A DNA stretch of 62,843 bases, filler included, from Octopus bimaculoides (taxonomy: Eukaryota): NCBI RefSeq assembly GCF_001194135.2. It is 8 parts of 8 records of this genome, joined end to end, with 100 filler letters (N's around TTAATTAATTAA, not from the genome) between each part and the next. Parts side by side here need not be neighbours in the genome. Positions count along the whole stretch, not along the records: positions 58,919 to 60,806 come from NW_026412394.1; 7 more parts are not named here. One strand, 5' to 3'. The notes below the pieces were generated by a model. The model did no database searches. It was not told the DNA's origin and saw only the letters and a list, made by a program, of their open reading frames with translations. Position numbers and translations under genes: made by a program. Below, one piece after another: positions 58,919-60,806 of the stretch (position 1 is the stretch's first letter; each line of letters starts with the position of its first letter).

Positions 58919-60806
58919 CTACAAGCAGATCAATTACGAAATCTAAAGATCCATGGTTTGACTTCTGACCTTGAACTTGATAAGAATGGAAACCGTATTG
59001 GTTACTTTGCATTTTTAGCGCAAATTAATCCCAAAACTAATCGAACAGGTTCAGGAGAAGAAAGAGTCTTAGAATTTATTAGGTTCATCCAGAAAATCAA
59101 CGATTCTTCCCAGCTAGAAATACCATATTCTGCGAAAGGAGATTACGAAAGACTGGATACTCAAGCTTCGGTCATACTTCCAAACTCGGGTAAATACAAT
59201 GTACGTCAATATATGTCTTATTCAGGTATGATTGACGTAATCACACAGAGATTTGTTAAATATCCCGGAGAAACGTGGCCGCCAGTTGTGATGAAGAGGA
59301 AGGAATATGTCATAGCTCCTTACTTCTGTAAAACTCGGTGTGGGTTACGTCTGGTAAGCCCCGAGAATATAAATGTTTACGACTCTGGTACTTGTGAACC
59401 AGGTGGTAAATGCGTATGCAACGAGGGATTCAAAGGAAACACGTGCTCTATTATAGAGTGTAAATGTAAGTATGGTTACTGCGAAGTGCCAAGGAAATGT
59501 ATTTGTCATCCAGGTTATATGGGTGCCATTTGTGATAAGGCAAATTGCAGTTGTTTACATGGAATATGCGTTCGGCCTTTTCACTGTAACTGTAACTCCT
59601 GGATTTATGTAGGAGAACACTGTGATATACATATCATGCAGATTCTGTTGACATCCGGTTTGATTTTTCTAGTGGCATGCTTCTTTATATACTTCTTTAG
59701 TGTAAAGTTAATAGAACACAATCAGAAAAAAATAGCTCTAGCTAATACTGACTGGATTGTCGATTGGACGTTTGTTGAAGTTGTAAATCTAAGTCTTATC
59801 TCATTTCCTTATAACAGTAAATGTGCAACAATGATTCAGAGACACAAATGGAAAGAACAACAATGGTATGTAAATTTCATTCACAGTAATACAATAGATA
59901 GAAAAAATGAAGCTCTTATTCTCGAAATGGTTGGCTTGGTTAAACTTAGACACGAGAATGTTATTCAATTTGGTGGTGCTTGTTTAGTGAAACCTAATGT
60001 CAGTCTGTTTGTCGAATTCCTTGAGAAGGGAAGTTTAGAGGATGTTTTAGCAAATGAAGCAGTGGAACTTGGATGGGATTTCCTCTTTTCTTTCATGAAA
60101 GACATATGTCGTGGTATGGAATTTATCCACGACATATCAAACATTAAGTCCCACGGCCGTTTAAAATCTTCAAACTGTTTATTAGATAATAGGTGGACCG
60201 TACGCCTCACTGGTTTTGGAGCACATGTCATTCGTTTTGGAGAGAATAGAATTCCAAATGAGAAAACCCCGGAAGAAAAGAAAGAGCTTTTCTGGACGGC
60301 TCCTGAATTGTTAAAGCATGTTTCAGATTTAGATGGAATCAAGGCAGGTACACCACCTGGTGATGTTTATTCATTCGCAATAGTCACATGCGAAATTATT
60401 ACTAGGGCATCTCCTTATGAATACGAACTCAATTATTTATCAGTGAAAGACATTCTAGCTTTAATAAAATATAAATCTAGTAAGGCGGCACGGCGAATTT
60501 GGGAAGATATCGGTGGAGAGGACATGCTTTACACAAGACCAATTATAAAAGAAGATCTTTTGCCGACAGATAAAACATCACATGACTTATTTGGGAAGAT
60601 GATTGAACAATGTTGGCAGGAGGAACCTAAAGCAAGACCCGCTTTTAGCAAAATCATTACTATGCTTATGGAAATATATCCAATGAAAGGTGAGCTCATA
60701 GACAATTTAATTCATCGATTGGAGACGTATTCTAGTAGTTTAGAAGTTGTTGTTATTGAAAGAACAAAAGAACTTGAAAAGAACAAAGCTACAGCAGAAC
60801 AACTAC
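58919..60806 (+). CDS. Receptor guanylyl cyclase-like protein, partial: ectodomain end + 3 EGF-like repeats + TM + kinase-homology domain + coiled coil
   Basis: Open frame over the whole contig. LRNLKIHGLTSDLELDKNGNRIGYF resembles the G.TG...D.NGDR end of ANF/PBP1 ectodomains. Cys-rich EGF repeats ~59327-59623; TM ~59633-59704. KHD motifs RHENVIQFGGAC, KGSLEDVL, HGRLKSSNCLLD, WTAPELL, GDVYSFAI, CWQEEPKARP. Ends in ELIDNLIHRLETYSSSLEVVVIERTKELEKNKATAEQL, the typical rGC dimerisation helix. Both ends are cut by linkers. Confidence 0.88.

What the first reader, a model, noticed from the sequence alone, without database searches (positions are those of the whole stretch)
58919..59704. Receptor guanylyl cyclase-like protein with three juxtamembrane EGF-like repeats
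Seen: between the ectodomain-end motif (including KYPGETWPP, like the WPGG..PP juxtamembrane motif of rGCs) and the TM helix are three six-Cys repeats: CKTRCG...CEPGGKCVCNEGFKGNTC, CKCKYGYCEVPRKCICHPGYMGAIC and CSCLHGICVRPFHCNCNSWIYVGEHC. Established: NPR-A/B, GC-C, retinal GCs and echinoderm speract/resact receptors have no EGF stalk. Inference: a domain-shuffled rGC whose stalk could extend the ligand-binding domain or mediate cell-contact binding.
Basis: partly seen in the sequence, partly recalled or inferred. Interest (0 to 1): 0.72.

Follow-up and report, generated by a model that had tools for sequence, protein, structure and literature searches.

The report
Receptor guanylyl cyclase with EGF stalk
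The piece encodes part of an octopus-type cell-surface receptor guanylyl cyclase in which three disulfide-locked EGF modules form a stalk between the ligand-binding domain and the membrane; this old but rare receptor subfamily sits in sequence databases, and I found no paper that describes it.

Summary
The piece (58919-60806) is one open frame of 629 codons, cut at both ends. It encodes the tail of an ANF-type ectodomain, three six-Cys EGF-like modules (aa 137-176, 181-205, 210-235), a TM helix, a kinase-homology domain (KHD) and the start of the dimerisation helix.

The closest solved structures are NPR-A and GC-C. The closest protein is an Octopus bimaculoides 'speract receptor-like' protein (69% identity), which continues into a cyclase domain with intact catalytic motifs.

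The stalk is not a cephalopod one-off:
- EGF-stalked cyclases form one clade (99/100 bootstrap bipartition).
- Members occur in octopods (many paralogs), a unionid bivalve, the centipede Strigamia and unidentified marine eukaryotes.
- Only about 20 of 1.84 billion representative protein clusters carry the architecture.
- Other rGCs have 5-12 residues where this family has 95-190.

Full-length octopod members (~1,680 aa) also carry a ~480-aa N-terminal beta-sandwich extension. They are intronless genes in tandem clusters.

All 18 stalk cysteines and the loop lengths are invariant across nine paralogs, so the stalk is most likely a rigid spacer and transmission rod. Nine literature searches found no description. 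Verdict: a new variant of a known kind, moderate interest.

The parts
58919..59326 (+). C-terminal end of the extracellular ligand-binding region. It holds the last strands of the ANF_receptor-type domain (aa 1 to about 30), then about 100 aa of membrane-proximal extension that includes KYPGETWPP (59258-59284). Cut by the piece's 5' edge.
   Evidence: It aligns at 63% identity with O. bimaculoides P0002. The ANF_receptor Pfam hit of P0002 ends at the position that matches aa ~26 here. Paralogs have full ANF_receptor hits. The AF2 model is poor here (pLDDT <50) because the domain is truncated.
59327..59446 (+). Stalk module 1 (aa 137-176): an atypical six-Cys 'hinge-EGF', C-x3-CG-x16-C-x5-C-x-C-x8-C. 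Its C-x3-CG start and long loop are specific to this family.
   Evidence: C137, C141, G142, G157, C159 and C165 are invariant in all 8 sequences aligned across phyla. The C3-C6 half matches EGF_2 and EGF_Teneurin. It also matches the C-terminal half of the DLL1 DSL domain. pLDDT is 72-87.
59459..59533 (+). Stalk module 2 (aa 181-205): a compact, non-calcium-binding EGF, C-x-C-x4-C-x5-C-x-C-x8-C.
   Evidence: Best stretch of EGF_DL_JAG and JAG1-like_EGF2. It aligns with DLL1 EGF1 and WIF-1 EGFs. All Cys are invariant in 9 octopod sequences.
59546..59623 (+). Stalk module 3 (aa 210-235): a compact EGF, C-x-C-x4-C-x5-C-x-C-x9-C. It ends 4 residues before the membrane helix.
   Evidence: 41% identical to module 2. 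pLDDT is about 90. All Cys are invariant in 9 octopod sequences.
59636..59707 (+). Single transmembrane helix (aa 240-263), followed by basic residues (KLIEHNQKK).
   Evidence: Hydropathy maximum of 2.53. AF2 helix at 239-270 with pLDDT 90-97.
59735..59767 (+). Intracellular juxtamembrane motif ALANTDWIVDW, conserved in the family.
   Evidence: Consensus 'AALANxDWIVDW' with W279 invariant in alignment A2.
59840..60667 (+). Kinase-homology domain, a pseudokinase. HGRLKSSN (60152-60175) replaces HRD. The beta-3 Lys is Asn (WYVN, aa 319). DFG is GFG (aa 432-434).
   Evidence: Pfam PK_Tyr_Ser-Thr at aa 308-583, 1.1e-31. Aligns with the NPR-A KHD. Motif table.
60689..60805 (+). Start of the coiled-coil dimerisation and linker helix (GELIDNLIHRLETYSSSLEVVVIERTKELEKNKATAEQL). 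It is cut by the piece's 3' edge just before the cyclase domain.
   Evidence: Aligns with NPR-A residues 742-814. The orthologous helix in P0002 runs into Guanylate_cyc at aa 845-1028.

Best explanation
The piece is part of a type I, single-pass receptor guanylyl cyclase of an octopod. It is the fast-evolving ortholog, or a recent paralog, of O. bimaculoides 'speract receptor-like' P0002.

It belongs to an old, rare rGC subfamily. From outside to inside, the octopod members have:
- a signal peptide;
- about 480 aa of beta-sandwich modules;
- an ANF-type ligand-binding domain;
- a hinge-EGF followed by two compact EGFs;
- a TM helix;
- a dead kinase-homology domain;
- a coiled coil;
- a class III cyclase domain.

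Proposed mechanism (inferred). The receptor works as a dimer, like NPR-A. An unknown extracellular ligand binds the ANF-type domain. The three abutting, non-calcium-binding EGF modules have 4-residue linkers, no indels, nine inferred disulfides and only 4 residues between the last Cys and the membrane. They therefore act as a rigid rod of fixed length, roughly 8-9 nm. The rod holds the binding domain well above the membrane and passes the ligand-induced reorientation of the two subunits to the TM helices. From there the signal goes through the KHD and coiled coil to the cyclase dimer, which makes cGMP.

In this copy the KHD lacks the beta-3 Lys and the DFG Asp. It probably acts as a scaffold without the ATP modulation known for NPR-A.

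Shown: the domain order, family membership, conservation and rarity. Inferred: dimerisation, rigidity, the ligand site and cGMP output.
For: Identity:
- Open 629-codon frame.
- KHD and linker match NPR-A and GC-C best.
- P0002 is 69% identical over 100% of the query and has Guanylate_cyc with FSDI, KVETISD and PRYCLFGDTVNTASRMES intact.

Stalk:
- EGF models pass their cut-offs.
- AF2 pLDDT is 72-91, with Foldseek hits to DSL-EGF of DLL1, Jagged and DLL4 (2vj2: rmsd 2.2 A over 88 columns).
- Sequence matches to the EGFs of WIF-1, DLL1 and HHIP.

Structural constraint:
- All 18 Cys are invariant and there are almost no indels in nine octopod sequences that are only 39-53% identical to the query in the stalk.
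- dN/dS is 0.36 in the stalk against P0002.
- There is no DNA-level repeat, so the modules are old.

One origin:
- The EGF-stalk rGCs form one bipartition in 99 of 100 NJ bootstraps on KHD plus cyclase (64 sequences, 566 columns).

Rarity:
- Only 9 of the 120 best homologs carry the stalk.
- About 20 of the top hits from an exhaustive profile search of 1.84 billion representatives carry it.

Full architecture.
Against: - The cyclase domain and most of the ligand-binding domain lie outside the piece. They are inferred from a 69%-identical relative.
- No ligand, expression site or activity is known for any member.
- Rigidity, dimerisation and disulfide pairing rest on analogy and on a monomer model built from an 8-sequence alignment. 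Model coordinates could not be inspected.
- Stalk surface residues vary a lot between paralogs, and the stalk resembles protein-binding DSL-EGF modules. Both fit a binding role as well as a spacer role.
- Some octopod paralogs have degenerate cyclase motifs, so not every member makes cGMP.
- Overall dN/dS of 0.39 is fairly relaxed.
- The NJ tree uses a limited outgroup and is unrooted.
Confidence: 0.65

Rival explanations
1. The stalk is itself a binding module, not just a spacer. Like the DSL-EGF1-2 region of Notch ligands or the EGFs of WIF-1 and HHIP, it would bind a protein or proteoglycan on another cell or in the matrix. That would make the cyclase a contact-dependent or co-receptor-dependent sensor.
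For: - The best structural matches are the Notch-binding DSL-EGF regions of DLL1, Jagged-1/2 and DLL4.
- The best sequence matches are WIF-1, DLL1 (C-terminal half of DSL plus EGF1-2) and HHIP.
- Non-Cys stalk residues differ widely between paralogs (39-53% identity to the query).
- Family members also carry N-terminal Ig-like modules of the kind common in adhesion receptors.
Against: - No Pfam DSL hit even at E<=10.
- This compact EGF type is widespread, so the resemblance is generic.
- The stalk has only a small net charge (11 K/R, 9 D/E), so it has no heparin-binding character.
- Invariant loop lengths and direct abutment on the membrane fit a structural rod.
- No partner is known.
Confidence: 0.2
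2. Biological role: the octopod genes are a lineage-specific sensory (chemosensory or sperm-chemotaxis) receptor family. This copy would detect an environmental or conspecific cue rather than a hormone. This extends the main explanation and does not exclude it.
For: - There are at least six to eight divergent octopod paralog lineages.
- The genes are intronless and sit in tandem clusters: at least 4-5 genes within about 75 kb in O. bimaculoides, and neighbouring genes in Argonauta.
- The ectodomain evolves fast (dN 0.19-0.38 at dS about 0.5-1).
- Lineage-specific rGC expansions in C. elegans are sensory, and sea-urchin sperm rGCs bind egg peptides (PMC1435932, PMC4883820).
Against: No expression data of any kind. 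Tandem expansion alone does not show a sensory role. The bivalve and centipede members are few.
Confidence: 0.25
3. This particular copy is a decaying or catalytically silent family member, for example a regulatory heterodimer partner or a young pseudogene, and not a working cyclase.
For: - The KHD has lost both the beta-3 Lys (K in P0002, N here) and the DFG Asp.
- Several octopod paralogs (P0125, P0258, P0126) have degenerate cyclase catalytic motifs.
- dN/dS is 0.39 overall and 0.54-0.57 in the TM/juxtamembrane and linker segments.
- The cyclase part of this copy is unseen.
Against: - 629 codons run without a stop or frameshift in AT-rich DNA.
- All 18 stalk Cys and the rGC signature motifs (HGRLKSSN, WTAPELL, linker helix) are intact.
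- dN/dS is well below 1 in every segment.
- The closest relative, P0002, keeps all the cyclase motifs examined.
Confidence: 0.1
4. Assembly artefact: a chimeric contig that joins an EGF-repeat gene to a cyclase gene.
For: The piece is a short contig (1,888 nt) of unknown origin.
Against: The same collinear architecture is encoded in a single uninterrupted exon in chromosome-scale assemblies of O. bimaculoides and Argonauta hians and in a 144-kb long-read contig. It recurs in a bivalve and a centipede.
Confidence: 0.01

Closest known systems
Natriuretic peptide receptor A (NPR-A/GC-A) and other canonical membrane guanylyl cyclases (GC-C, sea-urchin speract/resact receptors)
   Same: - Single TM helix.
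- KHD with HGxLKSSN in place of HRD.
- WTAPELL motif and the post-KHD dimerisation helix.
- In the ortholog, a class III cyclase domain with guanylate-specific residues.
- An ANF_receptor-type ectodomain in relatives.
These are the best PDB matches (7e-41).
   Different: - Canonical rGCs have 5-12 residues between the juxtamembrane Cys pair and the TM. This protein has about 95 residues of three EGF modules.
- Full-length family members add about 480 aa of N-terminal beta-sandwich modules.
- This KHD lacks the beta-3 Lys and the DFG Asp, which canonical rGCs keep.
- The octopod genes are intronless.
DSL-EGF1-EGF2 region of the Notch ligands Delta-like and Jagged; EGF repeats of WIF-1 and HHIP
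   Same: The same compact, non-calcium-binding EGF type (C-x-C-x4-C-x5-C-x-C-x8-C, 'C..G.C..P..C.C..G..G..C'). These are the top Foldseek and phmmer matches. Pfam EGF_DL_JAG passes its cut-off.
   Different: No DSL domain by Pfam. The context differs entirely: here the modules form a juxtamembrane stalk of a cyclase. No C2 or WIF domain is present. The resemblance is to a widespread EGF subtype and is not evidence of shared function.
EGF-stalked receptor kinases (Tie1/Tie2 with three EGF repeats; plant wall-associated kinases with juxtamembrane EGF repeats); analogy recalled from knowledge, not tested
   Same: Single-pass receptors in which tandem EGF modules lie between a ligand-binding region and the TM helix, ahead of a kinase-fold domain.
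   Different: Their kinase domains are active and are the output. Here the kinase fold is dead and the output is a cyclase. There is no sequence relationship beyond the generic domains.
Automatically annotated database entries of the same subfamily: O. bimaculoides 'speract receptor-like' (P0002), Argonauta hians 'atrial natriuretic peptide receptor 1-like' (GAB1605771.1, GAB1605939.1), Sinanodonta woodiana KAL3862181.1, Strigamia maritima T1JDE2, T1IT78, T1IL80 and T1ISG6
   Same: The same architecture and the same clade.
   Different: They are named after canonical rGCs. The stalk is not mentioned in any paper found. The O. bimaculoides model is cut short by an assembly gap.

Membership tests
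Receptor (membrane) guanylyl cyclase | Class III guanylate cyclase catalytic domain at the C-terminus | tested here: inconclusive
   The piece ends in the linker helix, about 20 aa before the domain would start. The 69%-identical P0002 has Guanylate_cyc at aa 845-1028 (3.7e-63). Its metal-binding Asp residues, guanine-specifying Glu and Cys, and catalytic Asn and Arg motifs are intact.
Receptor (membrane) guanylyl cyclase | Kinase-homology domain with HGxLKSSN in place of the HRD catalytic loop | tested here: met
   PK_Tyr_Ser-Thr at aa 308-583, 1.1e-31. HGRLKSSN at aa 412-419. Best PDB hits are the NPR-A and GC-C KHDs.
Receptor (membrane) guanylyl cyclase | Coiled-coil dimerisation and linker helix between KHD and cyclase | tested here: met
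   aa 556-627 align with NPR-A 742-814, including DNLxxRxExYxxxLExxVxERT.
Receptor (membrane) guanylyl cyclase | Single transmembrane helix, type I topology | tested here: met
   Hydrophobic stretch at aa 240-263. AF2 helix at 239-270. Full-length paralogs start with signal peptides.
Receptor (membrane) guanylyl cyclase | Extracellular ANF_receptor (periplasmic-binding-protein type I) ligand-binding domain | tested here: inconclusive
   Only the last ~30 residues of the domain are in the piece, and Pfam gives no hit on the piece. The aligned relatives have ANF_receptor hits from 3.9e-11 to 2e-19.
EGF-like domain | Six cysteines with EGF spacing, scoring above curated Pfam cut-offs | tested here: met
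   Three six-Cys modules. EGF_2 scores 26.2 (cut-off 22.1), EGF_DL_JAG 27.6 (cut-off 27) and EGF_Teneurin 25.5 (cut-off 24.3) on the stalk. EGF_2 scores 23.9 (cut-off 22.1) on the whole protein. For module 1, only the C3-C6 half is matched.
EGF-like domain | EGF fold (two small beta-hairpins) | tested here: met
   AF2 pLDDT 72-91 with paired short strands in each module. Foldseek gives probability 1.0 to DSL-EGF structures, with 2vj2 at rmsd 2.2 A over 88 columns.
EGF-like domain | Disulfide connectivity C1-C3, C2-C4, C5-C6 | not testable with these tools
This needs mass-spectrometric disulfide mapping or a solved structure.
Calcium-binding EGF (cbEGF) subtype | N-terminal D/N-x-D/N-E/Q-x-C consensus and a hydroxylated Asp/Asn site | tested here: not met
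   Read directly from the sequence: the inter-module linkers are SIIE and DKAN, and no cbEGF consensus is present. cEGF and EGF_CA models did not score.
DSL domain (Delta/Serrate/LAG-2) | Match to the DSL profile | tested here: not met
   No Pfam DSL hit among families with E<=10 for four family stalks. Only the C-terminal half of the DLL1 DSL aligns with the C3-C6 half of module 1.
Teneurin EGF region (PF25024) | Score at or above the gathering cut-off of 65 bits | tested here: not met
   31.8-33 bits. This is a generic resemblance of tandem compact EGFs.
Active protein kinase | Beta-3 Lys, HRD Asp and DFG Asp | tested here: not met
   WYVN (Asn at the Lys position), HGR and GFG. The domain is a pseudokinase, and more degenerate than the KHDs of three canonical rGCs (P0016, P0018, P0028), which keep the Lys and the DFG/DYG Asp.

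The most novel reading that the evidence does not exclude
The EGF-stalked cyclases are an unrecognised, ancient class of receptor. In this reading, the N-terminal Ig-like modules and a DSL/EGF-like stalk make the cyclase a contact-dependent or surface-cue sensor. The intronless tandem arrays in octopods would then be a new chemotactile or gamete-recognition receptor repertoire that signals through cGMP.
Probability: 0.15. Interest if true: 0.8.

Novelty: new variant of a known kind. Interest (0 to 1): 0.5.

Why it matters
How ligand binding outside the cell is passed through a single helix to the cyclase is still debated for receptor guanylyl cyclases. The usual models rest on a short, flexible juxtamembrane hinge.

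A natural subfamily that puts a fixed-length, disulfide-locked three-EGF rod between the binding domain and the membrane is a ready-made test case. If it signals, transmission must work by rigid-body movement of whole subunits.

The family also shows that the rGC ectodomain has been rebuilt by domain accretion (Ig-like modules plus EGFs). Reviews do not list this architecture.

The retrogene-like, intronless tandem expansion in octopods points to an unexplored cGMP-coupled receptor repertoire in animals known for unusual sensory systems.

Tried and rejected
- A profile search with the stalk-only alignment A1 returned one short ENA fragment and none of the known members. It was uninformative.
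- A search with the unidentified-lineage member P0132 was swamped by low-complexity candidates. It gave no named relatives, so the taxon of the 5-6-EGF members (P0008, P0009, P0012, P0129, P0131, P0132, P0152) stays unknown.
- A search for their run accessions in papers found nothing.
- DSL-domain identity for module 1 was considered and rejected.
The similarity is positional only.
- The Cys-rich rGC ectodomains of Asterias, Dreissena and Mactra (P0197, P0240, P0213) were checked. They are a different, non-EGF juxtamembrane motif and do not belong to this family.
- There are no DNA-level repeats between the EGF modules.
- The antisense ORFs (at most 125 aa) show nothing of note.
- Nine literature searches found no description of an EGF-stalked rGC. 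One of them was badly framed.
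Full report
**What is in the sequence.** The piece 58919-60806 is a single open frame (frame 1 from 58919, 629 codons, no stop) that runs off both edges. GC content is 32-42% with no break. The opposite strand has only short ORFs. Eighteen of the 25 cysteines fall in aa 137-236 (binomial tail 1.7e-15 against the rest of the protein). They form three modules:
- aa 137-176: C-x3-C-x17-C-x5-C-x-C-x8-C
- aa 181-205: C-x-C-x4-C-x5-C-x-C-x8-C
- aa 210-235: C-x-C-x4-C-x5-C-x-C-x9-C

The modules are joined by 4-residue linkers. A hydrophobic helix (aa 240-263) follows after 4 residues.

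**Domain identities.** On the whole protein, Pfam finds PK_Tyr_Ser-Thr (aa 308-583, 1.1e-31) and EGF_2 above its cut-off. On the stalk alone, EGF_2, EGF_DL_JAG and EGF_Teneurin all pass their curated cut-offs. EGF_TEN does not, and no DSL hit appears even at E<=10. The best solved-structure relatives are full-length NPR-A (7e-41) and GC-C. The alignment covers the KHD and the post-KHD helix (query 556-627 against NPR-A 742-814).

An AlphaFold2 model of aa 1-271 is confident for the stalk (pLDDT 72-91) and the TM helix. It is poor for the truncated ectodomain tail. Foldseek puts the stalk on the DSL-EGF region of DLL1, Jagged-1/2 and DLL4. By sequence, the stalk matches the EGFs of WIF-1, DLL1 (C-terminal half of DSL plus EGF1-2) and HHIP. 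The modules are therefore compact, non-calcium-binding EGFs. Module 1 is atypical: only its C3-C6 half matches EGF models, and its C-x3-CG start occupies the place of the usual rGC juxtamembrane Cys pair.

**Is it a guanylyl cyclase?** The piece stops just before the catalytic domain. The closest protein is O. bimaculoides 'speract receptor-like' P0002 (69% identity over the whole query). P0002 continues into Guanylate_cyc (3.7e-63) with FSDI, KVETISD and PRYCLFGDTVNTASRMES intact. Against the P0002 coding sequence, dS is 0.49 and dN/dS is 0.39 overall (0.36 in the stalk). So the gene is constrained but evolves fast, and it is either the ortholog in a related octopod or a recent paralog.

The KHD is a pseudokinase, as in all rGCs (HGRLKSSN). 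This copy also lacks the beta-3 Lys (WYVN; P0002 has K) and the DFG Asp (GFG). Three canonical rGCs examined keep both.

**How unusual is the stalk?**
- Among the 120 best homologs, only nine have 8 or more Cys in the 160 aa before the TM. One of the nine is the window's own product. The rest have 0-5.
- In 15 other rGCs, the conserved W-x-GG-x3-4-PP-x-D-x-P-x-CGF-x-G-x2-C hinge is followed by only 5-12 residues before the TM.
- An exhaustive profile search of 1.84 billion representative proteins found about 20 clusters with stalk plus KHD. It also returned many unrelated multi-EGF proteins and ordinary rGCs.

Named members come from Octopus bimaculoides, Argonauta hians, the unionid bivalve Sinanodonta woodiana and the centipede Strigamia maritima. 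A further group with 5-6 EGFs comes from Tara Oceans, JGI and SRA assemblies of unknown taxon.

In a neighbour-joining analysis of KHD plus cyclase (64 sequences, 566 columns), all EGF-stalked cyclases form one bipartition in 99 of 100 bootstraps. The octopod sequences form a clade in 99, and the query pairs with P0002 in 100. The stalk is therefore the shared mark of an old subfamily and not a recent cephalopod shuffle. C137, C141, G142, G157, C159 and C165 of module 1 are invariant across phyla.

**The rest of the family architecture.** Full-length octopod members are about 1,680 aa. They have a signal peptide, about 480 aa without any Pfam match, an ANF_receptor domain, the three EGFs, a TM helix, a KHD and a cyclase. 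The P0002 model is cut short by an assembly gap, and the upstream ORF encodes the same N-terminal region. An AF2 model of this region (mean pLDDT 64) is all-beta. It matches only generic tandem Ig-, macroglobulin- or invasin-like sandwiches.

**Gene organisation.** The octopod genes are intronless:
- P0002: 3,162 nt
- Argonauta P0125: 5,046 nt
- Argonauta P0003: 3,006 nt
- P0122: 5,085 nt, on a 144-kb contig

They lie in clusters. At least 4-5 family genes sit within about 75 kb on O. bimaculoides CM046612.1, and P0003 and P0123 lie about 6 kb apart in Argonauta. The bivalve gene spans 185 kb and so has introns. This points to a retrogene founder followed by tandem duplication in octopods. It also means the window piece may be genomic DNA and not cDNA.

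**Mechanism.** Nine octopod sequences are only 39-53% identical to the query in the stalk. All 18 Cys are nevertheless invariant, and loop and linker lengths are almost unchanged. Together with the 4-residue linkers and the direct abutment on the membrane, this fits best a rigid rod of fixed length. The rod would lift the ANF-type binding domain about 8-9 nm (an estimate from typical EGF dimensions; inference). It would transmit subunit reorientation to the TM helices, the KHD, the coiled coil and the cyclase dimer, as proposed for NPR-A.

The main alternative is that the stalk binds a partner. The DSL-EGF and WIF-1 resemblance and the variable surface favour that reading. The generic nature of this EGF type, the missing DSL signature and the near-neutral charge speak against it.

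The tandem, fast-evolving octopod expansion recalls the sensory rGC expansions of C. elegans and the sperm rGCs of echinoderms (PMC1435932, PMC4883820). A sensory role is plausible but untested. Some paralogs (P0125, P0258, P0126) have degenerate cyclase motifs, so silent or regulatory members exist.

**Literature and novelty.** Nine full-text searches and two papers read for 'EGF' found no description of an EGF-containing rGC. The standard architecture given there is extracellular domain, TM, KHD, coiled coil and cyclase (PMC1435932). The proteins exist in databases under names borrowed from canonical rGCs. I rate this a new variant of a known kind. Interest is moderate: EGF accretion is a common theme in animal receptors. 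The fixed-length stalk is nevertheless a useful natural test of rGC transmembrane signalling, and the octopod expansion deserves a look at where it is expressed.

Noticed in passing
L006 (O. bimaculoides CM046612.1), L007 and L010 (Argonauta hians), L004 (ENA ctg114524l): Octopod members of the family are intronless genes of 3-5 kb, unlike typical multi-exon rGC genes. The bivalve homolog P0127 spans 185.5 kb, so it has introns. This suggests a retrogene founder in cephalopods.
   Followed up: partly
L008, L006 and L009 (CM046612.1, about 12.10-12.18 Mb); L010: The genes form tandem clusters. P0004, a 1239-aa member, P0002, P0005 and a 225-aa cyclase fragment lie within about 75 kb in O. bimaculoides. 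P0003 and P0123 are divergent neighbours about 6 kb apart in Argonauta.
   Followed up: partly
P0122, P0125 and P0126 aa 1-480; L006 977-2998: Full-length octopod members carry a ~480-aa N-terminal extension with no Pfam match even at E<=10. It is predicted to be all-beta (mean pLDDT 64) and matches only generic tandem Ig-, MG- or invasin-like sandwiches. The unidentified-lineage members (P0129, P0131) have about 150-200 aa ahead of the ANF domain that look, by eye, like one such module. The O. bimaculoides gene model P0002 lacks the extension only because of an assembly gap.
   Followed up: partly
window 59864-59881 and 60206-60226: The KHD of this copy lacks the beta-3 Lys (WYVN; a single-base change from the AAA/AAG Lys codon, and P0002 has K). 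It also lacks the DFG Asp (GFG). Both residues are needed for nucleotide binding in kinase folds, so ATP modulation as in NPR-A is unlikely.
   Followed up: partly
P0125, P0258 and P0126 (cyclase domains): Some octopod paralogs have degenerate catalytic motifs. They read 'PRYTLFGDTMLIAATMES' or 'PRFCVLGKTIDIALKML' in place of 'PRYCLFGDTVNTASRMES'. They may be pseudo-cyclases or heterodimer partners.
   Followed up: no
window 58919-60805 against L006 3001-6162: Synonymous divergence from the O. bimaculoides gene is uneven. dS is 0.7-1.05 in the ectodomain and stalk but 0.2-0.32 in the KHD and linker. Possible causes are gene conversion among clustered paralogs or extra constraint on the 3' half.
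   Followed up: no
L005 (Logan SRR27444427), 355-4809 and 4982-8410: The 5-6-EGF member P0132 is intronless and GC-rich. It lies tail to tail, about 170 nt from an intronless 1142-aa gene that, by eye, ends in a bromodomain-like sequence. This looks like a compact genome. The organism is unknown and might not be a bilaterian.
   Followed up: partly
P0197 (Asterias), P0240 (Dreissena), P0213 (Mactra): A different set of rGCs has Cys-rich ectodomains that end in a juxtamembrane 'CGDxxCE..E.C.TCP.DCG.CP' motif in place of EGFs. This is another non-canonical rGC ectodomain.
   Followed up: no
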